From positions 186,001 through 250,000 of IMG/VR virus record IMGVR_UViG_3300023174_000040: DNA of 64,000 nt. The stretch is one strand, 5' to 3'. Of this stretch, positions 13,295-49,930 are shown in pieces. Positions within the stretch are counted from its first letter, which is position 1. Every line of letters begins with the position of its first letter. A program made the translations under genes and the position numbers. The notes beneath the pieces are model-generated. The model saw only the letters and a program-made list of their open reading frames with translations, made no database searches and was not told where the DNA came from.

Positions 13295-16200
13295 ATGACA
13301 AATATAAACAAGAATTTATCCAATTTAAACTCAAAATATCACGAAATAACGAATAGCATAGATAACTTATTCTATTTTAGTGACGACCCAGCAGTCAGTG
13401 ATTTGGGATCGACAAATGTTTCATCGATATCTGTCCAATCTGATGGCAAACTAATTTTAGCAGGAGTTTTTGGAGAAGATATAAGAGGAGCGTGGGGGAC
13501 TACTTTTTTCTTTGAGCATGGGTATGGAGTTATTAGAATCAACCAAGATGGCACTGTCGATGAAACTTTTCAAGCTCCGCAATTTGGAGATTATTTTAAT
13601 TATGGAGAAGGATCCAATGGAGCCGGTGGTGGTGGACAAAGCTTATCAACGGCAATACAATCTGATGGTAAGATACTCGTAGGAGGCAATTTTGGATTCA
13701 TCGCTGCATCTGGTGACGTTGAGCATCGTAATATAGTCAGATTAAACACGGATGGATCTATAGACCAAACATTTTCAGTTTCTTTTGATTACTCAATACA
13801 TCAATTAAATATAACAGAGGATGATTCTATAATTGTAAATAGTTGGGCAGACCCTTTTAATACGCATACAAATAATTATGAAAATAATTCTGTTAGTACT
13901 CCGGTTGCTTCTGTTTGCAAAATACTCAGCGATGCAAATGCAGATGTTCCGGGCGAACTAGATCTCACATTTAATAGTAACTTTTTGGATTTATATGACT
14001 CAGGTTCAAATTATCAATTTAATACAAATAATACAGAAATAGCAAAGGTGCTAAGTAACGGGAAAATACTAATTCCAACATACTCGGAATTATTGTCAAA
14101 GACAATTTTGATTTTAATGAACTCGGATGCAAGCGATGCAGTTGAAATTGATATTTCGATCAATGCAGACGGCCCTTTTCCTGGGATTTTTTGTTTTCAC
14201 GAAGAATCTAACGGAGATGTTTTAATTGGAGGATATTTTAATTTATTAAATGGGGAAGACGGCAATTCACGCTATGATCTAATGCGTTTAAAATCTGATG
14301 GAAACGGTGGATTCCAAGGATTTGACATGGATTTTGCGCCCGGTTTTGAAATTGGAGACGGTATTGACTGGCTACCTCGTGGTGTATATGCGATAGACAC
14401 CCAAGACGATGGCAAGATATTAGTGGGCGGATTTTTTAATAATCTCCTATACGGCCAGGAATTAATTCCCAGCAGAAATATGTGTAGATTAAACACAGAT
14501 GGCACATTGGACAGTTCGTTTGCAACTTCAACTTCTTTTGATTTCGGAGTAACTCAAATTAAATATTTGGGAGACAATAGCATATGGGCTGCAGGACTGT
14601 TCTCTAAACCTAGAAGAAATATTGTAAAATTAAATCATTTAGGTGTTCCCGGCAGCTTTGGATTGCCAATAGAAGTCAACACTCTTGGAATTAAAGATGG
14701 GGGAAATGATTTATATGATTGGGGAAATTTCATTAACACTGACGTCCATCTATATGTCATCGATGAGAACGAAGAAGTTGTGCCCCCATACAGCGATTTA
14801 AAAGAAGGAGGAATATTTGGACAAGATTCCTATGAGCCTGGGGTCACTTTTTACGCCACACCCTCCACTCACACACAAGCGGCCTATCAATCTAATTATG
14901 ATTTTGATAATATTTATTATTACGATTATAAACCAACAGTATTCGACGGAGAAGTCAAAAGTGGAACAGATTATTTTGGAGAAGGAAGTAGTTATTTCAC
15001 CAATATGTATCCAGGGTTATTTGTTTTGATTGCAAGGAATGTAAACATAGGAGAGTTTTCGATAACCGGGGCCGCAGGGAATGGGAATAGATTAACATCT
15101 GCTGATGTATTCGAGGTTAATTCTCGAAATAAGAATTACTCTTGCTATCTAAAATGCACTTTTAATGCACCCACAGCAAATCCTCTTGATGATCCTTCGT
15201 TGAGCCATATAATTATAGTTCCGGGAAGTCCGGATGGAATAACTCAACTATATGATGAAACGTCAGAATTTGATGACCATTGTCTACAGGGTTTATCTGA
15301 TAGGAAGGATATTTACTATTTAATAGTAAGCCTTGGAAATAATACTGAACTTACAACAGAAAATGCTACCATAGTGGCCAAAAAATTCTTAGATGTTATC
15401 TACGATGAAGTTGAGCCAAAATCTTGTGGAAGCACAAATTGTGATACAAATATAAGATGCTTAAAACATAATAAAGATTTAAAAATAGGTTCAACTTTAA
15501 ACTCATGCGGATGCTCCACATGGAAATATGTAGATCCGGGTACCAAGTTAAAAGGATCCCTGTCATCTAGATCATCTAAAAAAGGTGCCTGGATACCCGC
15601 AATAACAGTTTGCTCACAAGTATTGTATTCGTATCCTTCTAAAGTTGTGTCTTCAACAGGTACAACCACAACAGTAGCCCCAACTACAACAACCACAACT
15701 ACAACAACCACAACTACAACAACAGTAGCCCCAACTACAACAACAGTGGCCCCAACTACAACAACCACAACTACAACAACCACAACTACAACAACCACAA
15801 CTACAACAACCACAACTACAACAACCACAACTACAACAACAGTGGCCCCAACTACAACAACCACAACTACAACAACCACAACTACAACAACAGTGGCCCC
15901 AACTACATTACAATTAACATCGTATCTAATGTGGATGAACGGATTAGACGTTGAATATCGCTCAGGTTCAGTATACAATAAATATGAGTATATGTCACGA
16001 TATGGTGGCTCATTAAGTTGGAGTATCAGTAATTTAGTAATAAATGGTCAGCAAATAGTTGGTGGAGGATCAGAATACAACAGAACAATAAATGCTGGTA
16101 GTACGGTCTACAGAGATGACGGCAACGGAGTTGGAATTGCTAACTGCGTCGATATGTTAAATGTAATCATGGATGATTTTGAATTAACAACAAGATTTGA

Positions 16201-16387
16201 AACTTATAGTGAGTCGTTCATTCGTGCCAATTACTACACAGCTGATAATTTCAGTTTAACAATAACTGAATCTTATAGTTTGGTTGATTCCAACGATCCT
16301 TTAAATCCTAGTGTGTATTCGATCTCAGCAGATGGCAGTGGTATAAAGGATGGGATTAGCGCTGCTCCACCTGAATATTGGGGATGA
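13295..16387 (+). CDS. Large virion/adhesin-like protein: delta-60 repeats, shared core, Thr-rich linker and distinct C-terminal domain
   Basis: QSDGKILVGG...RLNTDG repeats; core colinear with 5502..9005 (YFGEGSSYFTNMYPGLFVL vs YFGDGSSYFTAMFPGMFVL). Confidence 0.8.
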   Translation: MTNINKNLSNLNSKYHEITNSIDNLFYFSDDPAVSDLGSTNVSSISVQSDGKLILAGVFGEDIRGAWGTTFFFEHGYGVIRINQDGTVDETFQAPQFGDYFNYGEGSNGAGGGGQSLSTAIQSDGKILVGGNFGFIAASGDVEHRNIVRLNTDGSIDQTFSVSFDYSIHQLNITEDDSIIVNSWADPFNTHTNNYENNSVSTPVASVCKILSDANADVPGELDLTFNSNFLDLYDSGSNYQFNTNNTEIAKVLSNGKILIPTYSELLSKTILILMNSDASDAVEIDISINADGPFPGIFCFHEESNGDVLIGGYFNLLNGEDGNSRYDLMRLKSDGNGGFQGFDMDFAPGFEIGDGIDWLPRGVYAIDTQDDGKILVGGFFNNLLYGQELIPSRNMCRLNTDGTLDSSFATSTSFDFGVTQIKYLGDNSIWAAGLFSKPRRNIVKLNHLGVPGSFGLPIEVNTLGIKDGGNDLYDWGNFINTDVHLYVIDENEEVVPPYSDLKEGGIFGQDSYEPGVTFYATPSTHTQAAYQSNYDFDNIYYYDYKPTVFDGEVKSGTDYFGEGSSYFTNMYPGLFVLIARNVNIGEFSITGAAGNGNRLTSADVFEVNSRNKNYSCYLKCTFNAPTANPLDDPSLSHIIIVPGSPDGITQLYDETSEFDDHCLQGLSDRKDIYYLIVSLGNNTELTTENATIVAKKFLDVIYDEVEPKSCGSTNCDTNIRCLKHNKDLKIGSTLNSCGCSTWKYVDPGTKLKGSLSSRSSKKGAWIPAITVCSQVLYSYPSKVVSSTGTTTTVAPTTTTTTTTTTTTTTVAPTTTTVAPTTTTTTTTTTTTTTTTTTTTTTTTTTTTTVAPTTTTTTTTTTTTTTVAPTTLQLTSYLMWMNGLDVEYRSGSVYNKYEYMSRYGGSLSWSISNLVINGQQIVGGGSEYNRTINAGSTVYRDDGNGVGIANCVDMLNVIMDDFELTTRFETYSESFIRANYYTADNFSLTITESYSLVDSNDPLNPSVYSISADGSGIKDGISAAPPEYWG
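15661..15907 (+). repeat. Coding tandem repeat (15-bp ACAACTACAACAACC units interspersed with ACAGTRGCCCCA) encoding poly-Thr/VAP
   Basis: Directly visible tandem array. Confidence 0.9.
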
Positions 16388-16854: not shown

Positions 16855-16899
16855 CCTACTTAGAATCAGTTGTGACTCACCGGCAATCAATCAATCTAT

Positions 16900-17847
16900 T
16901 CAATCAGCTGCTATTGGGGATCCGTCTTCGGCGGAGATTACGTCTCTATTCTCGGCCAAAATCCTTGTTACTGGGCTGCCAACATGTGTTGTGCTTAATC
17001 TTAAATTTAATATTTGTTTTGGAAGTCTATATAATGGTCTTTTCCAAAATCTATGGTTCACGTTCTTTGTCAGCTTGTTATGGCCATGAGATCTAATAAT
17101 TTTGGTTTGAGATAACGGAGAAGCCGTAGTTGTGGTGGTTGTTGTGGTTGTGGTTGTTATAGTCTCTTCACATAAAAAACTTGAACCTTCCCAAGAAACC
17201 GATCCGTTGTTAGTGGCAATCTTTCCAAGTCCGCTACTATCATCTAGATAAGCCCCAGAACTATTAGTCAGCAATAAAAGTTTGGTGCCAGTTACAACAG
17301 GTAATTCAGAAGTTGGAACTGTTATTGAGCTCTGTGTTCCGTCGTATACCGAGTTTCCCTTGACCCATCTAAAATTGGTTATTTTACCATTCCAGTAATT
17401 TCCGCTACCGTATCCTATTTGTAATTGATCACTTGAATTTGTTACGTTGTTAGGTGTTGAGACATTTAATATTCTAGTTCCATTTTTATAGACAGAGGAG
17501 ACTCCGCTTTGTCTTACCACTGCAAAGTGGACCCATTGATTTAAATAATTTGATAAAATTACTGGACCATAGTACACACTCCCGTTATTTACCCAAAGTA
17601 AAAAATTGCCACTTTCAATACTTACAGCTATTGAGTGAGTGTTCCACTCGCCCACTTGAAATAATCTGCTATAACTTGGCGGTGATGCTTGTGTTTGATA
17701 TTGCCACCATTCGATGCAAAAATCTCCTGCACCCAAAGCCCAATCATTGCTACCAGCATAAGAAATATACTTGCCACTGGCCCCAAATACAAGGCTACCA
17801 TGGTTACATTCTGATAGGGCTCTGATGGATTTTGGTTGTTTTGACAT
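16900..17847 (-). CDS. LamG/ConA-like jelly-roll protein with Thr linker (putative virion fibre or decoration)
   Basis: DFCIEWW...NQWVHFAVVRQSG...VYKNG...WNGKITNFRW; poly-Thr near 17126-17163. Confidence 0.75.
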   Translation of the reverse strand: MSKQPKSIRALSECNHGSLVFGASGKYISYAGSNDWALGAGDFCIEWWQYQTQASPPSYSRLFQVGEWNTHSIAVSIESGNFLLWVNNGSVYYGPVILSNYLNQWVHFAVVRQSGVSSVYKNGTRILNVSTPNNVTNSSDQLQIGYGSGNYWNGKITNFRWVKGNSVYDGTQSSITVPTSELPVVTGTKLLLLTNSSGAYLDDSSGLGKIATNNGSVSWEGSSFLCEETITTTTTTTTTTTASPLSQTKIIRSHGHNKLTKNVNHRFWKRPLYRLPKQILNLRLSTTHVGSPVTRILAENRDVISAEDGSPIAAD

Positions 17848-19394: not shown

Positions 19395-19545
19395 TTTTTA
19401 TCCTTTTTTGGCCTATGTAAAGCAATTTTACTTTTATATTTGTATATTTTAAGCTAATATTCAATTGATTTTAGTGATTTTGATCAATTTTATTACTATT
19501 TCCATAGTATATATTGGAAACCATCAAATGTTGAGCAAAAATAAC

Positions 19546-21023: not shown

Positions 21024-21674
21024 ATGAATATTGAATATAGTTTAAAACAAATATATCCAAGAATTTTTGCGGTAATTATAAAAGATAATTACGATAGAGC
21101 AAATTTATTCTGCCGTGTCCAAGAATATTATGAATCAAAAAATGAAGAGTTCGCCGGCAAGGCATTCTCTATTTTTGATTATTATAGATGGTATAGTAAA
21201 AAGCACGGGGACAGTTTCACCTATGCTTCTGACTGGTCTGGTTTTAATTTACCTTTAAAGACCGCTGTAGACTGTCAGAAAAAAAGTGTTGTTGAGACTC
21301 CATATGATTTGATAATGAATGAAATACTAAGAAAAATATCAAGTATAAACAAAAAAGAAATAGGATATATTATAGGAATCAGATCACTTAACAGCGTCAC
21401 ATTTAGACATGAGCTTTGTCATGCATTTTATTATTCTGATGAGGCTTATAAAAATCAGATGGACGATATAACCAACACAATAAGTAAAAAAGATTTCAAT
21501 AAAATGAAAAAATGTTTAACCGACCTTGGATATAATCCCAAAGTTATTAAAGATGAAATTCAAGCATATATGGCTACAGAAATGGATGCTGAGTTATGCA
21601 AGAGCGTCAGAACAAAAAAAGAACTGCACAATAAATATAAAAAAGTTTTTAAACTATTCTTGACTAGGTATTAA
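21024..21674 (+). CDS. Putative zincin-like metallopeptidase
   Basis: HELCH (HExxH) with a downstream DEIQAY third-ligand motif. Confidence 0.55.
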   Translation: MNIEYSLKQIYPRIFAVIIKDNYDRANLFCRVQEYYESKNEEFAGKAFSIFDYYRWYSKKHGDSFTYASDWSGFNLPLKTAVDCQKKSVVETPYDLIMNEILRKISSINKKEIGYIIGIRSLNSVTFRHELCHAFYYSDEAYKNQMDDITNTISKKDFNKMKKCLTDLGYNPKVIKDEIQAYMATEMDAELCKSVRTKKELHNKYKKVFKLFLTRY

Positions 21675-22637: not shown

Positions 22638-22704
22638 CCAAGGTCAACACCTTTGTTCCCATACCCGGAACACCAAACAATGTTGTATGTTAATATATAG
22701 TAGT

Positions 22705-24346: not shown

Positions 24347-24982
24347 ATGGATAAAATATTACAAAATGAAGATAAATTCGTAATCTACGATAACGTCCTC
24401 ACTCCAGAAGAGTTTAAAGGTATGTGGGATTGGTTTCAAACTCTAGATTATTCTTCTATAAACTCAAATGGATTCATGAAAGTTTGGAAATTGACTGACG
24501 GAAATCCCATGGGGAGTAAGGAATATAATGCTAAAGATTACCCATTCAAAAACCCACTTGATAAGGTTTATGAAAAAATAAACGAAATTAATAATAACCA
24601 TCCAGAAATTTTTGGCAAATGGAGTGAAGTCTTTTTAAGAGCATATATCTATGGAAGAGGAACTAAAATAAATTGGCACAACGACACTGGCTATACAGCA
24701 GCAGTTATATTTTATACTCATCCCTATTGGGGAGCAGGATGGGGTGGCGAGTTAATGTTGGCCGAGACCCCAAACATAGAGTATAAAAAGGAAAATGTAG
24801 GCGGACCTTTAGAGACTTGGTGGACAGATAAAATAATGAACTATGTTGCATGTGGGTATTATGTTCAACCAAAGCCAAACAGAATTGTGGCAACAAGAGG
24901 CGGGGTTTGGCATCAAATAAACAGAGTAGACGAAGATTCCGGGTCCAATTCACGGTGCTCTATAGTTGCTTTTTTCAAATAA
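24347..24982 (+). CDS. 2OG-Fe(II) oxygenase (prolyl-hydroxylase-like)
   Basis: WHND (HxD), WGGEL, PKPNR, distal WH and RCS. Confidence 0.85.
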   Translation: MDKILQNEDKFVIYDNVLTPEEFKGMWDWFQTLDYSSINSNGFMKVWKLTDGNPMGSKEYNAKDYPFKNPLDKVYEKINEINNNHPEIFGKWSEVFLRAYIYGRGTKINWHNDTGYTAAVIFYTHPYWGAGWGGELMLAETPNIEYKKENVGGPLETWWTDKIMNYVACGYYVQPKPNRIVATRGGVWHQINRVDEDSGSNSRCSIVAFFK

Positions 24983-24985: not shown

Positions 24986-27967
24986 TTAACAGCAAATCTT
25001 AGTTAGTGTCATGCTGCCGATCCAGTTGGACGAGCAAGCACCTACCAAAGTCCAGCCACTTCCATTCCAATAACAGTGATTATTGTCCCCGCAACTCGTG
25101 TAATTTGATTTATTTCCTGATCCGGGTGCTTTTTGAGATACGGATAATATTTTATAATTCCTAGGTGATTCTATGCTGGCTATGTAGTCTAGGTTTCTCT
25201 GATCCCACGCCAGTGTACTTGGTGCACCATATCTTGATCTTAGATTAATAGGATCAGTAAAAATAACATTCGGCGTATATGTGGGCGTTGCCGTCAATGT
25301 GATTGTAGGTGTAGGAGTTAAAGTTTTTGTTGGAGTTGGTGTCGGGAAGGGTATATCATAACGACCTCGCAACATCTCGAAATTTTGAAGAACCTCGACT
25401 GCAGATAATCCCCTGTTGTATTGTTTAAATACCCCTACTCTTTGTTGTGACCAATCTGGAACTGGTTGGCTGTTGGCTGCAATTCTAAGAGGATAATTGC
25501 TACTAAAGTCATAATTATTTATCAACGGGCTATTATCGGTAAACATTTTTACTGAATTTTTATATAATCTAAACACGCCCTTAGTTCTGGTGTATACGAG
25601 ATGAACCCAAGTATTAAAATCAGTACTGTCCGTCAAGAGAGAAATCGGATTGCCGCCGGCATCTTGGTATTGCCACTCGGTGGTATTACTATTTATATTG
25701 TTTAAAACACCATTGAATCCGGCCCCCGCCGAGTATTTTCCTTTACCAAAGATTTTACCATAAGTAAAACCTCCATTCTTTGGATAAACCCATATTTCAT
25801 AAGCAAAGTCACCGCTCAAATTATTGATCGAAGCATTGTTGGCAACCTCCGCCCATTGAGTGGTGCTATTGGAATTAAATATCAAAATTCCACCATGATT
25901 AGCACTATAAATTGGCTGACTTATGAGTGTTGCGTGATTACCAAGACCGCTAAGATCTCTCCACACATAGCCAGTTCCAGGGTAACTCGATATATCCCCG
26001 GCATCTAGATGTAGAACTAACCCACTAACAGAAGACAAATATGTGCCTGTTACTGTTTGGGTTAATGTTGGGGTTTTAGTTGAAGTAGGAGTTTGAGTAT
26101 TGGTGGGAGTTCTGGTGTTGGTTCTAGTTAATGTTGGAGTGTTAGTTAATGTTTTGGTGTTAGTTAATGTTGGAGTATTAGTTGATGTTCTAGTGTTGGT
26201 TAAAGTTGGAGTGCTAGTTAATGTTAAAGTTGGAGTGTTAGTTAATGTTGTGGTACTAGTTTGTGTAGGGGTGCTAGTATTGGTCGGTGTTTGAGAACTA
26301 GTTAAAGTTGGAGTTCCCGTTAAAGTAGGGGTATTAGTTAGTGTGGGAGTTAGAGTCGGAGTGAGTGTTGGAGTGCTTGTTAAGGTTGCCGTCTGAGTTA
26401 AAATTAATGTTTGAGTACTGGTCAGGGTTTGAGTGCCAGTTATTGTCGGAGTATTTGTTAAAGTGGGAGTACTAGTTAAAGTGGGAGTTTCTGTTAGTGT
26501 AGGAGTATTTGTTAAAGTCGGAGTACTGGTTTTAATTGGTGTTTGAGTATTGGTGTTTGTTAAACTTATTGTGGGAGTTAGTGTAGGAGTCTCTGTTAAT
26601 GTGGGAGTATTTGTTAGTGTAGGAGTCTCTGTCAACGTGGGAGTATTTGTTAGTGTAGGAGTCTCTGTCAACGTGGGAGTATTTGTTAGTGTAGGAGTCT
26701 CTGTCAACGTGGGAGTATTTGTTAGTGTAGGAGTCTCTGTTAACGTTGGAGTAGATGTCAACGTAGGAGTCTCTGTTGACGTGGGAGTATTTGTTAGTGT
26801 AGGAGTGTTAGTAGGAGTGGATGTTTGAGTATTAGTTGAAGTAAGTGTCTGAGTACTTGTTAGCGTAGGTGTAATTGTAAGTGTCGCAGTTGGGGTTCTA
26901 GTATTTGTTCTTGTGAGAGTTGGCGTTAAGGTTAATGTGGGAGTAAGCGTGGGGGTAAGCGTGGGGGTAGGAGTGGGAACAACAGAGGGAGATAATATCT
27001 TATATGGACTAATATTATTAAAAATAATAGAAGAAGACCCACTGGATAAGGATCCCAATGTCCAAGATTCTTCTGCGTATATTGTTGGAAAATCAAATAA
27101 TCTTATATTTAAATAAGAACCCCCAGATCCATGAGTGGGAGATTCTCCTGCATCGGTGCTAGTGGTGGCCCATCCGACAACTTTATTAGAAGAGTCAATT
27201 AACACAACTTCAAATGATGCATAATCAACTTCTGTGAATTCAGGAAAGTCTTCTTTTGCTTTATTGATTGAATTAGAATAATTGAATTCAAATGATGTGC
27301 CAGAAAATTTTCTATCAATTAGATTATAGTCGCCAATATTTGATCCATAAAAATAAGAAGATGATAAATTAGAAGTATAGTCGTTTGTGCTTGGATTTTT
27401 TAATCTAAAATATCCACCAACGTAATATGCGGACACGGGATATGAAACTTGAGGGAGAGGCAAATCTAAATCATAAGGGGAAAAATTATTTACTCTACTA
27501 AATACAAGATATGTTTTTCCGCAAACAAACTGAGAAAAGCCAGGAAATCCAGTTGGAGTCCAAGATAGTAAATTATTTCCACTGGGCGCCTCTGTTATGA
27601 TCTTGGTAATTCTGGTCTTTACTTCGGGTGAAAGGTCAGAAATATTAAAATTAGATTCCGCTTTGTAGGTAATAAATTGAAATTTTTTATTTATAGCTCC
27701 ACTTTGATCAGGAGAATTTGAATTAATATTCAAAATATAATCAGAAAAATTACTTGCATTTTTTATTATGTATGATTTTTCAGGACCCAACGTACTAAAT
27801 CCAGGAAGTCCTGTTGGGGTCCAAGATAAAAGATTATTGCCACTAGCGGATTCTCCATATACTATATCGACTTGAGATAAACCGGATAGATTATAACTTT
27901 CTCTTGAACTTATTATTTGATATAATTTATTAATTATCATTTTAGTTCTAACCTCAAAGTGAAGCAC
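24986..27967 (-). CDS. Virion fibre-like protein with long Thr/Pro stalk and LamG domain
   Basis: Duplicated N-terminal [16 protein letters not shown]; about 300 aa of TPTLT repeats; GLVLHLDAG...WRDLSG.GNHA...WVHLVYT LamG; Cys-containing C-terminus. Probable start 27940. Confidence 0.8.
26050..26975 (-). repeat. Coding tandem repeat, 18/36-bp units ([12 protein letters not shown])
   Basis: Near-identical contiguous 36-bp units GTGTAGGAGTCTCTGTCAACGTGGGAGTATTTGTTA at about 26581-26796 within a longer degenerate array. Confidence 0.9.
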
Positions 27968-29362: not shown

Positions 29363-29405
29363 TAAGGATATATATTGTTTTCATCTAAAATTACTATGTT
29401 ATTAA

Positions 29406-37616: not shown

Positions 37617-37691
37617 AAATTATATTAGTTACTTATTAAGTATTTTTTAAAGAAAAATACAACTATATATTTTAGATTCTGAAAGGTAAAA

Positions 37692-39014
37692 ATGGCCGAT
37701 ACATTAATTCAATTAAAAAGAGCATTATCGTCTAACTGGGCACTGGTTAATCCCTTGCTTCTTGAGGGGGAAGAGGGCCTAGAAACAGACACAAATAGAA
37801 AGAAAACAGGCAATGGAATATCTCGATGGAACGATCTTCCTTATTCTTCTAAACAATTCGATAATATCTACGTAAATGGCAACACAATAAGTTCTCAGGA
37901 TGTTAATGGAAATATATACCTTCGGCCAAACGGAACAGGTAAAGCGTATGTAAACGATGATGAAATTCTAACAAAAGCTAATTTTATAAACAATTCTTCG
38001 ACAACAATACCATCCCAATACGCTCGAAAAGATCAAAACAATGTATTTCCATCGCAATACGGCAATACATTTGCGGGGTTAGTCGATATAACGGGAACTT
38101 TTAGAGTTGGATCCGTCACGGTTAATGCAACTGCGGTAGAATTAAACTATCTTCACGATGTAACACCGGGAACAGCAACTGTAAATAAACCATTATTTGT
38201 TAACAGTAATTTAGATTTATCTGGATTGAGGAATTTATCACTAACCGGGGCTGTAACTTCCGTTGGCGACATAAGATCATCGGGAAGTTTCTATTCAAAT
38301 AATAAAAAAATAGCAACTGAGGAATATGTTGATAACTCAAGGAAAAGTTTTGATATAAAACAATCAGTCAGAGCCGCCACAACAGCCGATATTAATTTGA
38401 CTGGTCTTCAGACAATAGATAATATTTCTTTAGTAGCTGGTGACAGGGTGTTGGTTAAGAATCAAATTCTTCCATATGAAAACGGAATATATGATGTTAA
38501 AATAGGCGCCTGGACAAGATCTTCTGACGCTAACTCTAACAATAATTTTACTACCGGGCTTTTTGTCTTTGCGTCAGAGGGCACAGCAAATATGGACACT
38601 GGTTGGCTGTTAATAACCAACGACACCATCAACTTGGGAGTAACAGATTTAGTCTTTAGTTTGTTTAATGGAGCCAACCAATTAACTGCTGGAGATGGGT
38701 TGACTAGGACTGGGAATTCTTTTTCGGCCAGAGGAACTCTGGGTAGGATAGTCGTAACTCCTTCTGGTATTGATCTAGCCGTCATACCCGGATTAGTTTC
38801 CGGCCCTTATTCAAAGGTCATAGTGGATTATTATGGTAGAGTTGTAGGAGGATCAAATCCAACCACTCTCGCTGGCTATGGGATAACAGATGCCATGCCA
38901 TATAGTCAAAATCTAAATAGCATATCAAATGCCGGACTAGGATCTCCAGGAAAAGTATTGGTGATCGAAGGTAACTACCCAGTTTGGGGGGATATAGATG
39001 GCGGAAGTCCTTGA
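37692..39014 (+). CDS. Tail fibre protein with Mtd_N-like N-terminal domain
   Basis: IQLKR...NPLLLEGEEGLETDT...GNG...WNDLPY; SVRAATT...IDNISLVAGDRVLVKNQ; VDYYGRV...PTTLAGYGITDA; ends IDGGSP. Confidence 0.85.
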   Translation: MADTLIQLKRALSSNWALVNPLLLEGEEGLETDTNRKKTGNGISRWNDLPYSSKQFDNIYVNGNTISSQDVNGNIYLRPNGTGKAYVNDDEILTKANFINNSSTTIPSQYARKDQNNVFPSQYGNTFAGLVDITGTFRVGSVTVNATAVELNYLHDVTPGTATVNKPLFVNSNLDLSGLRNLSLTGAVTSVGDIRSSGSFYSNNKKIATEEYVDNSRKSFDIKQSVRAATTADINLTGLQTIDNISLVAGDRVLVKNQILPYENGIYDVKIGAWTRSSDANSNNNFTTGLFVFASEGTANMDTGWLLITNDTINLGVTDLVFSLFNGANQLTAGDGLTRTGNSFSARGTLGRIVVTPSGIDLAVIPGLVSGPYSKVIVDYYGRVVGGSNPTTLAGYGITDAMPYSQNLNSISNAGLGSPGKVLVIEGNYPVWGDIDGGSP

Positions 39015-39035: not shown

Positions 39036-39776
39036 ATGACTTCTGTGGTAGTTTACATAATAAACGGTAATCTAAATTACCATAAAATGGCTCTTAATAG
39101 CATCAAAATGCTTAGAAAATTCAACAAAAACATAAGAATAATATGTTTTTGCACACATGATGAGACCATGTTTCCAGAAGAATTGATGGTTGAAACAAAG
39201 TATGTGAAGAACATAGACCCAGAATACTTCCCAGCAAACAAACAATATCTAGCCGATTTGGACTTTGACAATATATTTTACATAGATAGTGACACTTTTA
39301 TATTTGATGATATAGAAAAAATAATAAATAAATACCCAGAAGATATTGTGGGCTGTGAGAACAAGTGGGCCTATAGTGCAGACTTTAAATTATTTAAGCC
39401 CATTAATTCAGGCGTGCTATTGTTTAGAAATGGATCTAACAAAAAAATATACAAAGACTTTAATGATAAGCTCAATAAAATAAAAGAAACCCACCCCGAA
39501 CTATGGGTTTGGCTTGAGAGATATAATAAATGGGTGAGGGAAGAATTCCTAATGAGTCAAATAGTTCATGATGATAATATAAATAAAAATTATTTTAAAA
39601 GAAATCATGTTAAGATACCAGAAAATATCAATGACTTTGAATATATGGATGCGATAATATTCCATACATACACACACAATTGGGAAAGATTGCTAAAATT
39701 CAAAAATGTTAAAAGAAAAGTTTTGAGGCCAAAATTCAAATTAAACTCATATATATTTCATCATGAGCTTATTTAA
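39036..39776 (+). CDS. Glycosyltransferase (GT8-like, GT-A fold)
   Basis: FYIDSDT (DxD), INSGVLLF, IFH. Confidence 0.7.
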   Translation: MTSVVVYIINGNLNYHKMALNSIKMLRKFNKNIRIICFCTHDETMFPEELMVETKYVKNIDPEYFPANKQYLADLDFDNIFYIDSDTFIFDDIEKIINKYPEDIVGCENKWAYSADFKLFKPINSGVLLFRNGSNKKIYKDFNDKLNKIKETHPELWVWLERYNKWVREEFLMSQIVHDDNINKNYFKRNHVKIPENINDFEYMDAIIFHTYTHNWERLLKFKNVKRKVLRPKFKLNSYIFHHELI

Positions 39777-43476: not shown

Positions 43477-43477
43477 T

Positions 43478-46138: not shown

Positions 46139-47344
46139 ATGGGAAAATTTCAAGATTACGTTTTATACAAAGAGAACAACTACAAAGAGAACAATATTCC
46201 GGTAGTTTCAAAAGTTAAATTGGCTAGGAATCCAGGAGTAGAAGATTTCCAACCATTCGTAATCGATAAAGACAACCACCCCAGTTTAAGATTGCTTATA
46301 AAAGCTTTCGAAAATAGCCCACAAATAGGTGTTGGTTACACCACCATGGATAAAACAGATGGTGAGGTTGAACCAAAACTTAAAAAGAAAGTCGTCTACT
46401 TAACAGGTGGGGCAGTTCGTGATCATCTAAAAGGAAAGACCCCGAGAAACTATGATCTTGCAACAGATGCCACATCAAGCGAAATTAAATTAATTTTAAA
46501 GGGAAATGGTTTTGAGGAAACTCAGACTCCGAGAAGTAACAAGAGTTTCTTTGCCAGTAGGATGGATGATAAAAATAAGCCCGTAGAATTCACAGTTGTT
46601 ATTAACGGAGAAAACTTTGAATTATCTCCTTTGTCAAAATCCATTAAGAATAGGAATTTAAATGTTGATGGATTTTCAGCAACATCAAGCTTAGAAGACG
46701 ATGCAGCATCAAGAGACTTTACAATAAATGCAATGTATATTCCACTTAAAAATAGTGAAGGAGAAAACACAGAACTACTTGATGTTTATGGTGGTGCTCA
46801 TCATCTTAAAAATGGTCAAATAATCTCTATCGGGAAGTTCTCAAAAAGAGTTGAAGATGACCCAATGACAGCACATAGATATATAAGAATGCAAGCCAGA
46901 TACGGAAATGAAGACATCCCTGAAGATCACATCGAATCTATGGGAAAAATAAACGATCTAAATAAAAACTATAAAAGGGAATACATTCTTGGTCTCGAGA
47001 ATCCCGAAATAAATGACAGAAAATATTTGGATATGTACAAAAACACAGGTCTTTTAAATACAGTTTATCCTTTAGATAATTTAGCTGTGGACGACGTGCC
47101 AGAAAAAGCTTACAATGATAGATTTTTAACTTCTGCTTGGTTGATGAAAGATAAAGCAATAGAACAAGTTAAATTTGCTTTACTATCAGCGGGGTGGGAA
47201 TCAAGAGAAGTAGAAGATATCGCACATCTTATCAGCATGTATCAAGCAGAAAGAAATAATTACCAGCAGGTTTCAACTCCTTGCGGACTTTCTGATAACA
47301 AAGTTAATAAGTGGAAAAAGATATATTCAACATCAGCCTGGTGA
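46139..47344 (+). CDS. Divergent class II tRNA-nucleotidyltransferase paralog with altered catalytic motifs and CTS-like N-terminus
   Basis: GGAVRD present, but DxD reads NYD, RRD reads SRD(FTINA) and EDxxR reads DDPMT; starts MGKFQDYVLYKE. Confidence 0.8.
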   Translation: MGKFQDYVLYKENNYKENNIPVVSKVKLARNPGVEDFQPFVIDKDNHPSLRLLIKAFENSPQIGVGYTTMDKTDGEVEPKLKKKVVYLTGGAVRDHLKGKTPRNYDLATDATSSEIKLILKGNGFEETQTPRSNKSFFASRMDDKNKPVEFTVVINGENFELSPLSKSIKNRNLNVDGFSATSSLEDDAASRDFTINAMYIPLKNSEGENTELLDVYGGAHHLKNGQIISIGKFSKRVEDDPMTAHRYIRMQARYGNEDIPEDHIESMGKINDLNKNYKREYILGLENPEINDRKYLDMYKNTGLLNTVYPLDNLAVDDVPEKAYNDRFLTSAWLMKDKAIEQVKFALLSAGWESREVEDIAHLISMYQAERNNYQQVSTPCGLSDNKVNKWKKIYSTSAW

Positions 47345-48196
47345 TTCTAGGACCAGCTTTTTAGCATTGTTTAGAATCTTGTCTATGCTTCCCGCAGGTA
47401 TCTTATCTTTGAAGTGATTGTAAGCTCCTTTTATCATTTCATGTTCCGGGTTGCATGTTAATTCAAGCCAACCTACAAAATAATTCCAAATTCTATCCTC
47501 TAGAACAAGAGGGTATTTAACGCCTTCGGGCCTACCAAACCGGTGAACCCACTTTAATTGAGGGATACAAATTGCTTTGCCCCCACGTGTTCTAAATTTT
47601 TCATGAATATAACCTTCTTCTCCGCCAAATCCCTTAAAGTGCTGGTTGAATCCGACCCAATTCTTGGTCTCGCATGAAAAAACACCAAGACCATGCATGA
47701 GAATCTCAAAAGGCTCACCTTTTTTCAAGTTTTCATGATCTGTGTGCCAGGTCCCATACATGGAATGATTCCAGACCGGAGAAAAGCTTGTAGATTCATT
47801 TCGCAAATCGTCATAAAGAAGAGGTCCCTGAACTATGTTTTTGCAATCAGGGTTTTGTTCATAATATTTCAAAAGACTTTCTATTGCACCCTTTTGAAAT
47901 AAAACGTGGCAATCCATTGATATGGTATACTTGCCCTTTGCTTGCTTGAATATTTCATTTCTTACTGCAGTGCTTTTCTTTTCTTCATATGGGATATATC
48001 TTCCTCTGGCCCAACTATTAACAAAAGATTTAACCGGTTCGGCATGTTTACCTTTTGGGTTATTATCTATGACTAAAAATTCAACCTGATCAGTGTTGCA
48101 TACTTCGTGATACATGCGAAGTGCTTGGAGAGAGAAATACACTCCATCATAATCATCATAGGTCGCCATTCCGATAGTCAATAATTTTTCACTCAT
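47333..48196 (-). CDS. GT2-family glycosyltransferase
   Basis: LTIGMATYD...VIDNNP...RNEIF...ISMDCH...F.GFGGEE. Confidence 0.8.
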   Translation of the reverse strand: MSEKLLTIGMATYDDYDGVYFSLQALRMYHEVCNTDQVEFLVIDNNPKGKHAEPVKSFVNSWARGRYIPYEEKKSTAVRNEIFKQAKGKYTISMDCHVLFQKGAIESLLKYYEQNPDCKNIVQGPLLYDDLRNESTSFSPVWNHSMYGTWHTDHENLKKGEPFEILMHGLGVFSCETKNWVGFNQHFKGFGGEEGYIHEKFRTRGGKAICIPQLKWVHRFGRPEGVKYPLVLEDRIWNYFVGWLELTCNPEHEMIKGAYNHFKDKIPAGSIDKILNNAKKLVLESPG

Positions 48197-48238
48197 TATT
48201 TTTCCTTTTTTGTATTATAACAATTAATATATTTTATT

Positions 48239-49930
48239 TCAAGATTCTTTTCTTAATTCTGCCGAGTAGTGTTCGAATCTATTGTGTTCGGTTGGTGTCA
48301 TGAGCAAAAGTCCACCTTGAATATTACCTTTTTTAGTTTCTTGGTAAATATAACTCATCCAAGTTTGTTCGTATGAATGAGCCCAAGTAGTTTCTAAAAA
48401 CATTTTTTTGTTTCCTTCTCTGGAGACTACTTGGGGCCAATTGCAATAGTAAACTTCTCCATTTGTATATGGAACTCCTCGATGACTTTTTATGTTATTA
48501 TAAACAGTCTTGGGAGCATTTGGATCGGTTCCTAATTGAGGAAGCTTTTTATTATTTGGCCAATACTTTTCTCTGACATCTTGGGACACGTTATACCAAC
48601 TCCATTGAGTTCCATTGTCTCCAAAAAACTCAGTATAGTTTAATTTTAAAAAATCAAAACTTTCTTTGTTTGCTATTTCCATTGACTTAGAATAAAGATT
48701 CTCTGTTATTCTATTGAAGCCATTTTTACAAAGAGGTTCATTTTTATTTGAATAGAAGAACATATCATCTTCGAAAAACCAATGAAAATCAAATTCGTTT
48801 TGTTCCGCATGATCTGCTATGAATTGTCGGCCACCACATATCCCCAAGTTATCTTTTTTAATATGCTCGAAATTATATTCTTCACATAGTTTGATGTATT
48901 CATCATTCTTCGACAAGTCTGTTGAGTTATTGAGAAGAAATCTTTTCTTGGGTTTTATAAGAAAATCAGAGTCGTATGCTTCCATGCTTTTTAATAATGT
49001 TCTAAATTGATTGGGGCTGTTAAAAGTTATTACGTAAAGCGCAGTGTTATCTGTATCTGATTGACAATTTAATTTATTTTCTTTTACCTTCTCGTTTGTG
49101 AATTCTTTAAGATTCTCAAAGAAAGGATAAACTAAACCGTTTCCCGGTATTTCGTATCTATGAATCAAAGCAGGGTGCCTATGGCATAGTATTGTAAATA
49201 AACACTCATCTGCGCCCATATTCCCCTCTCTGAGGGTTGATTCCATAACCCCATAATAAAGGCTATTAATTTGAGATACTAGTTCTTTTCTTCCGCCAAA
49301 GAATCCCCCTCTTGCAACATAATCTACATAATTAATACCGCAATATTTTGCCATAGCATTTCTTTCAAAGCCATGTATTTCATCGTTAGCGGTATATGGA
49401 TATGTTATGTGCACAAACTTCTTTTGAATTTTACAATAATTATCAAGATTATCGAGAACCTTATCATGTGTAAAAGTTCCCTGGTGGACTGTATTTGTCA
49501 ATCCTCCATCTATCCAAAAGAAATAATCAGATTTAAATGGATTGTAAATGGACGAATCATTTAACATGAACATTTTTGTGAACATCATTGGATTGTAAAA
49601 TTCCAATGCCGCCTGAGGTGATTCTCTAAGCCAACCCGCTCTAGATAGCCATTCCTCATTTTTTCTTATTTCTTGTATTTTATCAAAGAAAGGATTCCAA
49701 GTTTTAAAGTCTTCATTTTCTTTAAAATATATTCTTGTTGGCTTATCCTTCCTTATGTCCAAAACTTCCTGCTCTAGGAATTTTGGAATCCAAATGCACA
49801 TTTGAGCATCAACTTCCAACATCTCAAAAAATCTGGCCTTGTAGTCGCTAAAGTTTCTTTGTGCCCAGCCGTCTAAGCTTTCTCGATTAAGATCCCAAAG
49901 ACCTGTGACAAGGGTAATATTTTTATTCAT
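48239..49930 (-). CDS. HtrL/YibB (WlaTC)-like glycosyltransferase fused to a second GT-like domain
   Basis: ITLVTGLWD...K.FML...FFWIDGG...GGFFGG...DE; C-terminal FFEDD domain. Confidence 0.7.
   Translation of the reverse strand: MNKNITLVTGLWDLNRESLDGWAQRNFSDYKARFFEMLEVDAQMCIWIPKFLEQEVLDIRKDKPTRIYFKENEDFKTWNPFFDKIQEIRKNEEWLSRAGWLRESPQAALEFYNPMMFTKMFMLNDSSIYNPFKSDYFFWIDGGLTNTVHQGTFTHDKVLDNLDNYCKIQKKFVHITYPYTANDEIHGFERNAMAKYCGINYVDYVARGGFFGGRKELVSQINSLYYGVMESTLREGNMGADECLFTILCHRHPALIHRYEIPGNGLVYPFFENLKEFTNEKVKENKLNCQSDTDNTALYVITFNSPNQFRTLLKSMEAYDSDFLIKPKKRFLLNNSTDLSKNDEYIKLCEEYNFEHIKKDNLGICGGRQFIADHAEQNEFDFHWFFEDDMFFYSNKNEPLCKNGFNRITENLYSKSMEIANKESFDFLKLNYTEFFGDNGTQWSWYNVSQDVREKYWPNNKKLPQLGTDPNAPKTVYNNIKSHRGVPYTNGEVYYCNWPQVVSREGNKKMFLETTWAHSYEQTWMSYIYQETKKGNIQGGLLLMTPTEHNRFEHYSAELRKES

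What the first reader, a model, noticed from the sequence alone, without database searches (positions are those of the whole stretch)
13295..49930. Candidate virion glycosylation system: about six GT genes interleaved with mucin-like Thr/Pro-stalked fibres
Seen: GT-like genes at 29406, 34108, 35331, 39036, 47333 and 48239. Four structural-looking proteins have long Thr(/Pro) tracts (13295, 16900, 24986, 27974). The GT genes sit next to fibre genes: 29406 is divergent from fibre 27974, 35331 is divergent from fibre 37692, and GT8 39036 follows it directly. Established: Thr/Pro-rich linkers are typical O-glycosylation substrates; chloroviruses, mimiviruses and some mycobacteriophages glycosylate their virions with their own GTs. 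Inference: a multi-step, O-methylated glycan coat on extended fibres.
Basis: inference. Interest (0 to 1): 0.72.

Follow-up and report, generated by a model that had tools for sequence, protein, structure and literature searches.

The report
Jumbo-phage protein glycosylation gene set
A freshwater jumbo phage carries at least eleven soluble sugar-transferase genes next to its tail genes and sixteen proteins with long threonine/proline stalks, and related phages keep the two kinds of gene side by side, so the phage probably coats its own appendage proteins with sugars, though no experiment shows it yet.

Summary
The observation largely holds. All six flagged genes are GT-A-type glycosyltransferases, with evidence of varying strength. 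Three of the four flagged proteins carry long Thr/Pro tracts; 16900 has only an 11-Thr run. The stated gene orientations are correct.

The window comes from a 323-kb T4-like freshwater jumbo phage. The system reaches beyond the given coordinates:
- a second glycosyltransferase cluster lies elsewhere in the genome;
- 16 of 435 ORFs have Thr/Pro tracts.

No glycosyltransferase and no Thr/Pro protein has a signal peptide or membrane segment. The held sequence has no polysaccharide exporter and no hydroxymethyl-base pathway.

In 80 loci around homologues of 48239 (a highly conserved tandem GT-A enzyme):
- 62 hold same-strand Thr/Pro-rich ORFs;
- 60 hold a GT60 polypeptide-GlcNAc-transferase homologue.

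The cultured phage XacN1 has this operon beside its baseplate genes and a PT-rich giant protein, and its virions stain for glycoprotein.

Glycosyltransferase and Thr/Pro genes here also share a promoter-like TATATA motif.

Virion-protein O-glycosylation is therefore the best reading (about 0.5), but it is circumstantial. This genome lacks GT60, the acceptors are not proven to be virion proteins, and one relative has the operon without Thr tracts. I rate it a new variant of a known kind.

The parts
13295..16387 (+). 1030-aa DUF5122 beta-propeller protein. A poly-Thr tract punctuated by VAP (aa 775-885) links it to a 145-aa C-terminal domain. Candidate acceptor.
   Evidence: Pfam DUF5122 1.6e-29. 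Tract shown. Paralogues at window 5502 and genome 295900.
16900..17847 (-). 315-aa ConA/LamG-like lectin-fold protein with only an 11-Thr run (aa 231-241). Weak candidate acceptor.
   Evidence: Pfam Laminin_G_3 1.8e-10. PHROG baseplate-wedge and virion-structural families 1e-10. Sequence.
24347..24982 (+). 211-aa 2OG-Fe(II) oxygenase of the prolyl-hydroxylase-like group, convergent with TP protein 24986 (3-nt gap). It is the only PF13640 gene in the genome. Possible Pro hydroxylase for the tracts (a lead only).
   Evidence: Pfam 2OG-FeII_Oxy_3 4e-8. Single copy. Invariant H111, D113, H189, R203. Weak profile hit to prolyl 4-hydroxylase 6t8m, E 0.011. Adjacency kept in relative G017.
24986..27967 (-). 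993-aa protein with about 380 aa of (T-x-T-P-T-L)n tracts. Its C-terminal domain is shared with annotated virion structural proteins. Candidate acceptor.
   Evidence: Tracts. PHROG 8510 virion structural protein 1.4e-12. tblastn hits to S-PM2 and Flavobacterium phage structural proteins. Imperfect 18/36-nt repeats with mixed codons.
27974..29362 (-). 462-aa protein with a Thr-rich stalk (aa 315-387) between an N-terminal domain shared with cyanophage virion proteins and a C-terminal domain. Candidate acceptor.
   Evidence: PHROG 6002 7e-13. tblastn hits to S-RIM44 and Sf-CH11 virion structural proteins. The ortholog in G017 is 726 aa with tracts of 144 and 98 aa.
29363..29405 (.). Divergent 43-nt intergenic region with a palindromic TATATA promoter-like motif serving 27974 and 29406.
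29406..30503 (+). 365-aa GT-A glycosyltransferase with a GT31-like fold.
   Evidence: AF2 pLDDT 90.8. Foldseek hits B3GNT2, B3GalT5/6, Manic Fringe and C1GalT1 at 8e-8 to 8e-6. Invariant R106, D108, D109, G110. Sits in an operon with homologues of 35331 and 48239 in relatives.
34108..35328 (-). 406-aa DUF8361-type GT-A-like protein with an N-terminal module resembling a rhamnose-binding (SUEL) lectin (aa 8-72). Replaced by three unrelated genes in a close relative.
   Evidence: Atlas hits. PDB phmmer 5h4s 3.4e-7 over aa 33-57. Module shared with 35331 and genome 143292. Cassette swap. Homologues lie in 25 of 80 operons.
35331..37616 (-). 761-aa fusion protein: GT34/DUF273 glycosyltransferase (aa 25-167), SAM methyltransferase (aa 233-380), lectin-like module (aa 471-533) and a second methyltransferase (aa 543-687).
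   Evidence: Pfam. PHROG 21658 4e-40. Internal BLAST. tblastn hits to mycobacteriophage methyltransferases that sit next to GT genes.
37617..37691 (.). Divergent 75-nt intergenic region with a TATATA motif serving 35331 and 37692.
37692..39014 (+). 440-aa tail fibre protein with a conserved tail-fibre N-terminus and no TP tract. Less conserved than its neighbours in relatives.
   Evidence: Pfam Mtd_N 1.5e-5. PHROG 11518 tail fiber protein 3e-37. 74% identity in L019, where neighbours are 80-95% identical.
39036..39776 (+). 246-aa small GT-A glycosyltransferase of GT8/GT77-like type, co-transcribed with the fibre gene.
   Evidence: PHROG 1962 glycosyltransferase 5.5e-7. Atlas scores 0.96-0.97 with Nucleotid_trans/Glyco_transf_8 neighbours. 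No Pfam hit.
47333..48196 (-). 287-aa GT2 glycosyltransferase with no membrane segment.
   Evidence: Pfam Glycos_transf_2 2.3e-11. No TM segment.
48239..49930 (-). 563-aa tandem GT-A enzyme: HtrL_YibB-type N-domain plus a second GT-A domain with invariant E387-D388-D389. It is the most conserved element of the system.
   Evidence: Pfam. AF2 and Foldseek hits to LH3, LARGE1, Mimivirus R699, K4CP and PmHS2. More than 6000 homologue clusters, the best 120 at 62-100% identity apart from one at 52%. 37-39% identical homologues in cultured XacN1, Xoo-sp13, CM1 and RAS14.
50732..62912 (+). Context: tail tape-measure and baseplate module that the GT block abuts.
   Evidence: PHROG tape measure, baseplate wedge and gp25/gp6-like families. 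Pfam Phage_base_V.

Best explanation
The region is part of a phage-encoded, cytoplasmic protein O-glycosylation machinery. It is probably expressed together with structural genes and decorates the Thr/Pro-rich linker tracts of modular virion-associated proteins with a methylated hetero-oligosaccharide or polysaccharide.

**Proposed steps**
1. About 16 phage proteins carry unstructured Thr/Pro stalks between folded domains. The tracts are shown; that they are exposed is inferred.
2. An initiating transferase puts the first sugar on Thr, or possibly on hydroxyproline made by the adjacent prolyl-hydroxylase-like oxygenase.
   - In relatives and in phage XacN1 this enzyme is a GT60 homologue.
   - In this genome it is unidentified. 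Candidates are 34108, 39036 and 47333 (inferred).
3. Elongation is carried out by the GT31-like 29406, the GT34 domain of 35331 and the tandem GT-A enzyme 48239. The fold of 48239 resembles bifunctional co-polymerases (folds shown, chemistry inferred).
4. The two methyltransferase domains of 35331 methylate or cap the sugars. This is inferred from the fusions.
5. The lectin-like modules of 34108 and 35331 hold the enzymes on already glycosylated stalks. This is an inferred analogy with the lectin domain of polypeptide GalNAc-transferases.

**Likely benefit.** Stiff, hydrated, protease-resistant stalks, and a variable surface.
For: **The enzymes**
- Six GT-A-type enzymes lie in the window.
- Five more GT-like genes and two further methyltransferase genes lie elsewhere in the genome.
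- None has a membrane segment, and no TP protein has a signal peptide.
- The 323 kb held encodes no polytopic exporter-like membrane protein.
- It has no thymidylate-synthase-type hydroxymethylase and no TET/JBP.

**Gene neighbourhood in relatives**
- Homologues of 29406, 35331 and 48239 form one tight same-strand operon behind a PF11397/GT60 gene in distant relatives.
- Of 80 IMG/VR loci, 62 have TP-rich ORFs within 10 kb (29 of the 34 full-length loci).
- 118 of those 121 ORFs are on the operon strand, and 30 directly abut the 48239 homologue.
- 60 of the 80 loci have GT60.
- In 15 long records the TPTxTPT pattern is 3.1-fold enriched in the operon's 20-kb neighbourhood.
- GT60 enzymes make GlcNAc-alpha-O-Thr on mucin-like proteins (PMC9472816).

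**Cultured precedent: XacN1**
- Its operon runs from GT60 (ORF334, 4e-77) to the 48239 homologue (ORF330).
- The operon lies beside the baseplate wedge genes and a 3313-aa PT-rich protein.
- Its virions show at least two Schiff-positive bands.

**Evidence within this genome**
- The GT block abuts the tape-measure and baseplate module.
- TATATA lies upstream of 5 of 7 GT-set and 9 of 11 TP/fibre-set unit-heading genes, against 30 of 197 other genes. None of them carries the other motif class.
- Non-TP domains of 24986, 27974 and genome 252718 match annotated virion or baseplate proteins.
- The GT cassette and the tract lengths both differ in close relatives.
Against: - There is no experimental datum for this phage.
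- This genome, its close relatives G016/G017 and the related huge phages LR756511/LR756501 lack GT60. The link to Thr as acceptor is therefore borrowed from other lineages.
- One 88%-complete relative (G003) has the operon but no TPTxTPT or T6 tract.
- 18 of 80 loci show no nearby TP ORF.
- In 5 of the 15 long records no TPTxTPT tract lies within 10 kb of the operon.
- Most TP genes of this genome lie far from any GT gene.
- The related loci share ancestry, so the counts are not independent events.
- Thr/Pro linkers also occur unglycosylated in many bacterial proteins (own knowledge).
- Some TP proteins carry M43 or S8 peptidase domains and need not be virion parts.
- The Schiff-positive bands of XacN1 were not identified.
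- Two of the GT/TP promoter-motif pairs share one palindromic element.
- The record is estimated to be only 64% complete.
Confidence: 0.5

Rival explanations
1. The glycosyltransferases remodel the infected cell's surface polysaccharide (LPS, O-antigen or capsule). This would block superinfection or change the receptor. The Thr/Pro tracts would then be ordinary linkers.
For: - A comparative study of 224 jumbo phages reads their polymorphic GT clusters in this way (PMC7824862).
- HtrL_YibB, GT2, GT8 and GT25 families are typical of LPS and EPS loci.
- Cassette variability between close relatives resembles O-antigen loci.
- Peripheral LPS-core transferases also lack membrane segments (own knowledge).
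Against: - No undecaprenyl-phosphate priming transferase was seen.
- No flippase, polymerase or GtrA-like partner was found among the 435 ORFs. Only nine ORFs have two or more hydrophobic segments, and none is polytopic apart from the tape measure.
- No nucleotide-sugar synthesis genes were found.
- This reading does not explain the conserved adjacency to same-strand TP-rich ORFs, the GT60 partner or the promoter motif shared with structural genes.
Confidence: 0.17
2. The enzymes glycosylate proteins, but not the Thr/Pro tracts. Possible targets are a few specific sites on capsid, sheath or fibre proteins, or host proteins. The closeness of the GT genes to TP genes would then only reflect both lying among late or accessory genes.
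For: - G003 has the operon without Thr tracts.
- TP genes are scattered genome-wide.
- In mycobacteriophages the acceptors are the capsid and tail-tube C-termini (as cited in PMC12619734).
- GT8 39036 is co-transcribed with fibre 37692, which has no tract.
Against: - In 30 of 80 loci a TP-rich ORF directly abuts the 48239 homologue.
- There is a 3.1-fold local enrichment of TP coding pattern.
- The major capsid protein has no Thr-rich extension.
- The GT60 family is specific for Thr-rich or Hyp acceptors.
Confidence: 0.18
3. Some or all of the transferases hypermodify phage DNA by glycosylating hydroxymethylated bases, which would protect it against host nucleases.
For: - The C-terminal domain of 48239 gives weak matches to Pfam TAGT (E 0.0015, 19 bits, below the 27.5 cut-off) and to the PHROG 842 beta-glucosyl-HMC alpha-glucosyltransferase (2.6e-6 over 60 residues).
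- In many relatives the operon lies next to a family B DNA polymerase gene.
- DNA glycans made by several phage GTs are described in a paper cited in PMC12619734.
Against: - No thymidylate-synthase-family hydroxymethylase and no TET/JBP dioxygenase lie in the 323 kb held. The TET/JBP search rang in no control genome, so that negative is weak.
- The fold of 48239 is a tandem GT-A like LH3, LARGE1 and K4CP.
- The partner GT60 family acts on polypeptides.
- The GT genes carry the motif class of structural genes, not that of the small-gene block.
Confidence: 0.05

Closest known systems
GT cluster of Xanthomonas jumbo phage XacN1 (ORF328-ORF334) and its Schiff-positive virion proteins (PMC5852040)
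   Same: - XacN1 has a full-length homologue of 48239 (ORF330, 39% identity).
- Its GT operon abuts the baseplate genes.
- A giant neighbouring protein carries a PT-rich tract.
- The authors already suggested that phage GTs make the virion glycoproteins.
   Different: - XacN1 has a GT60 (ORF334), a carbamoyltransferase and a GT9. None of its other cluster genes has a BLAST match in this genome.
- The link to PT tracts and to ORF330 was not made in that paper.
Mycobacteriophage virion O-glycosylation (Che8, Corndog, Myrna; Freeman et al. 2023; the paper is not held, so it is known here through the citation in PMC12619734 and my own knowledge)
   Same: - Phage-encoded soluble GTs plus methyltransferases modify virion proteins with O-linked glycans.
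- The methyltransferase domains of 35331 are 26-33% identical to mycobacteriophage methyltransferases annotated next to GT genes.
   Different: - Only the methyltransferase is detectably homologous.
- The acceptors there are short C-terminal tails of capsid and tail-tube subunits. Here the capsid protein has no such tail, and the candidates are long internal stalks of accessory proteins.
- The host phylum and phage lineage differ (T4-like jumbo phage).
GT60 polypeptide alpha-GlcNAc-transferases: T. cruzi mucin O-glycosylation (PMC9472816) and the cytoplasmic Skp1 hydroxyproline pathway of protists (Pfam PF11397 description, own knowledge)
   Same: - In relatives a PF11397 protein (1e-67) heads the operon next to Thr-rich proteins.
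- The enzymes are soluble.
- A prolyl-hydroxylase-like oxygenase and GT8/GT77-like and GT2 enzymes are also present here.
   Different: - No GT60 gene is present in this genome.
- The oxygenase matches prolyl 4-hydroxylase only weakly (E 0.011).
- The acceptor chemistry is untested.
Giant-virus glycosylation machineries (Mimivirus fibrils, chlorovirus capsid; PMC9614988 was listed but not read in detail)
   Same: - These are virus-encoded, host-independent, eukaryote-like GT-A enzymes decorating surface structures.
- Atlas neighbours of 29406, 34108 and 39036 are largely from Nucleocytoviricota.
- Mimivirus R699 is a structural neighbour of 48239.
   Different: - Giant viruses also encode nucleotide-sugar synthesis. 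None was found here.
- This is a tailed phage assembling in a bacterial cytoplasm.
Bifunctional tandem GT-A polymerases (LARGE1, E. coli K4 chondroitin polymerase, Pasteurella heparosan synthase 2) and the collagen enzymes LH3/COLGALT1
   Same: - Two GT-A domains in one chain are the best fold matches for 48239 (2.6e-10 to 1e-6).
- There is a DxD-type E-D-D motif in the second domain.
   Different: - Sequence identity is 8-11%, and TM-scores are low (0.2-0.38) because the domain arrangement differs.
- No activity is known for any HtrL_YibB protein (Pfam: unknown function).
Phage DNA glucosylation (T-even alpha/beta-glucosyltransferases, TAGT/JGT) and Gtr-type O-antigen seroconversion
   Same: These are phage-encoded sugar transferases. 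48239 has a weak local similarity to TAGT.
   Different: - The defining partners are absent: no hydroxymethyl-base synthesis, no GtrA, no membrane-anchored GtrB and no polytopic Gtr transferase.

Membership tests
CAZy GT31-like GT-A enzymes (29406) | GT-A fold with a DxD metal/nucleotide-sugar motif, closest in structure to beta-1,3-Gal/GlcNAc-transferases | tested here: met
   AF2 pLDDT 90.8. Foldseek hits B3GNT2, B3GalT5/6, Fringe and C1GalT1 at 8e-8 to 8e-6. Invariant D108-D109.
CAZy GT31-like GT-A enzymes (29406) | Sequence membership in Pfam Galactosyl_T or Fringe | tested here: not met
   No Pfam, PHROG or NCBIfam hit. The PDB profile search was empty. The protein is GT31-like in fold only.
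GT34 / GT2 / HtrL_YibB (35331 N-terminus, 47333, 48239 N-terminus) | Pfam match above the curated cut-off | tested here: met
   PF05637 46.8 bits (cut-off 23), PF00535 44.3 bits (cut-off 23.3), PF09612 44.9 bits (cut-off 24.1).
   No Pfam hit at E 0.01. Only PHROG 1962 at 5.5e-7 and Atlas neighbours carrying Nucleotid_trans or GT8. It is best described as a small GT8/GT77-like GT-A.
Jumbo-phage GT60-to-HtrL operon (XacN1 type, defined here) | Tandem GT-A HtrL-type enzyme | tested here: met
   48239 is 55-69% identical to the 80 IMG/VR homologues and 39% to XacN1 ORF330.
Jumbo-phage GT60-to-HtrL operon (XacN1 type, defined here) | PF11397/GT60 gene at the head of the operon | tested here: not met
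   No match in the 323-kb record, either by the Pfam model or by an HMM built from 61 operon GT60 proteins (best E 0.07). None in G016 or G017. The record is only 64% complete.
Jumbo-phage GT60-to-HtrL operon (XacN1 type, defined here) | Contiguous same-strand operon flanked by Thr/Pro-rich ORFs | tested here: inconclusive
   Here the three conserved genes (29406, 35331, 48239) are dispersed over 20 kb on both strands. TP genes 24986 and 27974 abut 29406.
Mycobacteriophage-type virion glycosylation | Homologous glycosyltransferases | tested here: not met
   Only the methyltransferase part of 35331 (aa 208-720) matches, at 26-33% identity. The GT34 part has no mycobacteriophage hit.
Mycobacteriophage-type virion glycosylation | Ser/Thr-rich C-terminal extension on the capsid or tail-tube subunit as acceptor | tested here: not met
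   The gp23-like capsid protein (genome 290950-292374) has an ordinary C-terminus. The tail tube was not examined.
Mycobacteriophage-type virion glycosylation | Glycan demonstrated on virion proteins | not testable with these tools
   This needs staining or mass spectrometry. The phage is known only from freshwater metagenomes.
Phage DNA base glycosylation (T-even, TAGT/JGT) | Pathway making hydroxymethyl-pyrimidine (thymidylate-synthase-family hydroxymethylase or TET/JBP) | tested here: not met
   PF00303 and PF12851 are absent from the record. The PF12851 search rang in no control genome, so that part is weak.
Phage DNA base glycosylation (T-even, TAGT/JGT) | TAGT domain above the Pfam cut-off | tested here: not met
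   19 bits against a cut-off of 27.5, over 46 residues.
Gtr-type seroconversion / surface polysaccharide synthesis | Membrane partners: GtrA flippase, membrane-anchored GT2, polytopic transferase, Wzx/Wzy | tested here: not met
   No GT has a hydrophobic segment. No polytopic membrane protein is found among the 435 ORFs. This was a hydropathy scan only, not a dedicated predictor.
Prolyl 4-hydroxylase (24347) | 2OG-Fe(II) oxygenase fold with an HxD...H triad and a 2OG-binding basic residue | tested here: met
   PF13640 4e-8. Invariant H111, D113, H189, R193 and R203 in 20 homologues.
Prolyl 4-hydroxylase (24347) | Specific relationship to peptidyl-prolyl hydroxylases | tested here: inconclusive
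   The best PDB profile hit is prolyl 4-hydroxylase 6t8m at E 0.011, followed by OGFOD1 at 0.3. JGI names two homologues Tpa1-like proline hydroxylase.

The most novel reading that the evidence does not exclude
Aquatic jumbo phages may build a proteoglycan-like coat on their appendages. A prolyl-hydroxylase-like oxygenase and an initiating transferase would prime the Thr/Pro stalks. The ubiquitous tandem GT-A enzyme (48239 family, more than 6000 sequence clusters) would then act as a co-polymerase, growing a repeating methyl-capped glycan on them, analogous to LARGE1 matriglycan or plant hydroxyproline-rich glycoproteins. Swappable GT cassettes and expandable stalks would diversify the virion surface between closely related strains. 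If so, virion glycosylation would be common rather than exceptional among environmental phages.
Probability: 0.15. Interest if true: 0.88.

Novelty: new variant of a known kind. Interest (0 to 1): 0.7.

Why it matters
Glycosylated phage particles have been shown experimentally only for some mycobacteriophages. For one jumbo phage, XacN1, there is only a hint from staining.

If the reading here is right, a distinct and very widespread enzyme set glycosylates mucin-like stalks on appendage proteins of freshwater jumbo phages. That set comprises a tandem GT-A enzyme, usually paired with a GT60 polypeptide transferase, plus interchangeable GT and methyltransferase cassettes.

Possible consequences:
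- It would change how phage surfaces, adsorption, stability, antigenicity and phage-particle interactions in water are understood.
- It would give a function to a protein family with thousands of members and to the unexplained Thr/Pro tracts of many phage proteins.
- It is directly testable in cultured relatives (XacN1, Xoo-sp13, RAS14/CM1).

Tried and rejected
- **PDB sequence searches.** Searches for 29406, 39036 and 48239, as single sequences and as profiles, gave nothing usable. Fold comparison was needed instead.
- **TAGT / DNA-glucosyltransferase lead for 48239.** I followed this lead and set it aside. It is below the cut-off and covers only about 60 residues. The model shows a generic second GT-A domain, and no hydroxymethyl-base genes are present.
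- **Divergent GT60 in this genome.** I looked with the Pfam model, with an HMM built from 61 operon proteins, and by pairwise comparison with the unannotated 436-aa ORF 43995-45305. None was found.
- **Nucleotide-sugar synthesis.** Epimerase/dehydratase and sugar-1-phosphate nucleotidyltransferase genes were not found.
- **Other XacN1 cluster genes.** They have no BLAST match here.
- **Literature.** The key mycobacteriophage paper (PMC10527164) is not held. Literature searches found no description of Thr/Pro stalks linked to GT operons in phages.
- **RNA runs.** No RNA run was listed for the phage, so expression timing could not be checked.
- **NCBIfam.** It added nothing.
- **Prolyl-hydroxylase idea.** It remains a lead only. 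The oxygenase is absent from the 80 operon loci. In other phages it sits between the portal and terminase genes, or is coupled to a GT2 gene.

Full report
**What the window is.** The 64-kb window is bases 186001-250000 of a 323,267-bp IMG/VR virus record that CheckV rates 64% complete.
- It is a tailed jumbo phage with a T4-type major capsid protein at genome 290950-292374.
- A tape-measure and baseplate module lies at window 50732-62912.
- The closest GenBank match is the uncultured huge phage LR756511, through the baseplate hub. LR756501/3 match only methyltransferase and structural domains.
- The same DNA recurs in freshwater lake metagenomes from 2017 to 2025.
- G+C content is about 35%.

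**Checking the glycosyltransferases.**
- Two genes are glycosyltransferases (GTs) by Pfam, above the curated cut-offs.
  - 35331 is GT34/DUF273, fused to a SAM methyltransferase domain.
  - 47333 is GT2.
- 48239 has an HtrL_YibB N-terminal domain.
  - Its AF2 model (pLDDT 86.5) is a tandem of two GT-A domains.
  - The best PDB neighbours are other two-GT-A enzymes: LH3, LARGE1, Mimivirus R699, COLGALT1, chondroitin polymerase K4CP and heparosan synthase 2.
  - It has an invariant E-D-D in the second domain.
- 29406 has no family hit at all.
  - A 32-sequence alignment gave a confident model (pLDDT 90.8) that matches GT31 enzymes, with an invariant R-x-D-D-G.
- 39036 is a small GT-A of GT8/GT77-like type on weaker evidence.
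- 34108 is a DUF8361 protein whose cluster model looks GT-A-like.
- 35331 also holds a second methyltransferase domain and a roughly 65-aa module.
  - 34108 and genome ORF 143292 share that module.
  - The module gives a short match to rhamnose-binding (SUEL) lectins.

**Checking the tracts.** Long Thr/Pro tracts are real in 13295, 24986 and 27974. 16900 has only eleven threonines in a row.
- The tracts are far beyond chance and are encoded with mixed synonymous codons on imperfect repeats, so they are kept at the protein level.
- They are not special to this region. Sixteen of 435 ORFs across the genome have them.
- These proteins combine the tracts with RCC1 or DUF5122 propellers, LamG, fn3, YHYH, M43 and S8 domains.
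- A second cluster at genome 143-151 kb holds a GT2, a GT17, a second DUF8361-like gene, a methyltransferase and a protein carrying the lectin-like module.

**Where the enzymes and tract proteins work.**
- None of the GT or methyltransferase proteins has a hydrophobic segment.
- None of the tract proteins has a signal peptide.
- The genome encodes no polytopic membrane protein that could export a polysaccharide.
- No genes for nucleotide-sugar synthesis were found.
- No thymidylate-synthase-type hydroxymethylase or TET/JBP was found in the sequence held.
- The chemistry therefore happens in the cytoplasm, with host sugar donors, on a cytoplasmic acceptor.

**Relatives.**
- A 98%-identical contig keeps the region as it is here.
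- A 70-95%-identical contig (G017) differs in three ways.
  - 34108 is replaced by three unrelated genes.
  - The 35331 ortholog is longer.
  - The SNF2 helicase is absent.
- In G017 the 27974 ortholog has tracts of 144 and 98 aa instead of 63.
- The 24986 ortholog there is 1183 aa, and an extra tract protein is inserted.
- The prolyl-hydroxylase-like oxygenase 24347 stays next to these genes in G017.
- Contigs from other lakes cover the 34108/35331 stretch only patchily.
- In distant relatives, homologues of 29406, 35331 and 48239 sit in one tight same-strand operon behind a PF11397/GT60 gene.
- One such operon directly follows two large tract proteins.

**The 48239 family.** It is huge (more than 6000 clusters) and unusually conserved.
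- All but one of the best 120 hits are 62-100% identical over the full length.
- In 80 IMG/VR loci around such homologues:
  - 62 have Thr/Pro-rich ORFs within 10 kb, and 29 of the 34 full-length loci do;
  - 118 of the 121 such ORFs are on the operon strand;
  - 30 directly abut the gene;
  - 60 loci carry the GT60 gene, which matches Pfam at 1e-67.
- The middle of the operon varies among GT34-methyltransferase, GT31-like, DUF8361, GT25, methyltransferase and epimerase-like genes.
- In 15 long records the TPTxTPT coding pattern is 3.1-fold enriched in the operon's neighbourhood.
- Five of those records have none within 10 kb of the operon.
- One 88%-complete record (G003) has the operon and no Thr tract at all.

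**Link to experiment.**
- GT60 enzymes that have been studied transfer GlcNAc to Thr of mucin-like proteins (PMC9472816).
- The cultured Xanthomonas jumbo phage XacN1 has a GT60 (ORF334, 4e-77) and a 39%-identical 48239 homologue (ORF330) in one operon.
- That operon lies beside its baseplate wedge genes and a 3313-aa protein with a PT-rich tract.
- The XacN1 authors saw at least two Schiff-positive protein bands in virions and suggested that phage GTs make them.
- The bands were not identified.

**Regulatory hint.** Two promoter-like motif classes stand out upstream of genes.
- GGTACGG lies before 35 genes, 34 of them on the plus strand at genome 33-184 kb.
- A TATATA element lies before 57 genes.
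- Among genes that head a unit, TATATA precedes 5 of 7 GT-set genes and 9 of 11 tract or fibre genes, against 30 of 197 others (p 0.002 and 5e-6).
- None of these GT-set or tract/fibre genes has the other motif.
- This suggests the GT and tract genes are expressed together with structural genes.
- Caveat: two GT/tract pairs share one palindromic element, and expression timing is unknown.

**Interpretation.** The best reading is a phage-encoded cytoplasmic protein O-glycosylation system that decorates the Thr/Pro stalks of virion-associated modular proteins with a methylated glycan (confidence about 0.5).
- Shown: the enzymes, the tracts, the solubility of both, the conserved neighbourhood and the tail-module context.
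- Inferred: the acceptor, the order of steps, the initiating enzyme, the role of the lectin-like modules, and the virion location of most tract proteins.
  - This genome has no detectable GT60, so the initiating enzyme is unknown.
  - Virion location is supported only by domain-level matches to annotated structural proteins.
- Rivals: host surface-glycan remodelling (0.17; PMC7824862), protein glycosylation at other sites (0.18) and DNA glycosylation (0.05).

**Novelty.** Phage virion glycosylation is known in mycobacteriophages, and the moraphage study noted four core GT families without assigning targets.
- Here the enzymes, the acceptor type and the phage lineage all differ.
- In the searchable literature I found no description of the coupling between the 48239/GT60 operon and Thr/Pro-rich proteins.
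- I rate it a new variant of a known kind, with interest 0.7.

Noticed in passing
window 48239-49930 and loci L026-L105: The tandem GT-A protein is 55-69% identical across phage lineages whose neighbouring genes are mostly not detectably homologous to this genome. It has more than 6000 sequence clusters, some fused to FkbM or MT24 methyltransferases. This points to very strong constraint or frequent transfer of a single gene.
   Followed up: partly
genome 33-184 kb (loci L003-L012); window 30500-31033: A GGTACGG(T) motif lies within about 110 nt upstream of 35 genes. All but one are on the plus strand, and many are small. It is a second promoter-like class, distinct from the TATATA class of structural and GT genes.
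   Followed up: partly
window 39763-42678: A 971-aa SNF2-family helicase sits between GT gene 39036 and 42636 here and in the 98%-identical contig. It is absent from the same position in the 70-95%-identical contig L019.
   Followed up: partly
window 19465-20778 and 46139-47344: There are two paralogous PolyA_pol-head (CCA-adding / poly(A) polymerase type) nucleotidyltransferase genes in one window.
   Followed up: no
window 21654-22592, 22687-23157, 31121-31573, 33305-33754: Unexpected accessory genes lie among the GT and TP genes: a caspase-like C14 peptidase, an MscL mechanosensitive-channel homologue, a phosphoribosyltransferase and a CAP/SCP-domain protein.
   Followed up: no
L003:4298-8091 and L005:6792-11696 (genome 21298-25091, 57792-62696): Thr/Pro-tract proteins that carry peptidase domains (two M43 metallopeptidase plus fn3 proteins, and one 1634-aa S8 subtilase), all without signal peptides.
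   Followed up: no
window 5502-9005: A 1167-aa DUF5122 propeller protein with a C-terminal F5/8 type C (discoidin, sugar-binding) domain. It is a paralogue of 13295 and genome 295900 but has no Thr tract.
   Followed up: no
window 50732-56263: The 1843-aa tape-measure candidate has seven hydrophobic segments between residues 735 and 1209.
   Followed up: no
L112:7267-8666: In another phage contig a 42%-identical homologue of the prolyl-hydroxylase-like oxygenase 24347 overlaps the stop codon of a GT2 gene. This suggests coupled hydroxylation and glycosylation.
   Followed up: partly
L109:3986-6487: A T4-type portal gene interrupted by an intein lies in a relative that carries a 61%-identical homologue of 24347, placed between the portal and terminase genes.
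   Followed up: no
genome 295374-298233 (L015:15374-18233): A paralogue of 13295 ends inside its Thr tract. It is followed after 61 nt by a 154-aa ORF that itself ends in a PT tract. This may be a split or recently rearranged gene.
   Followed up: no
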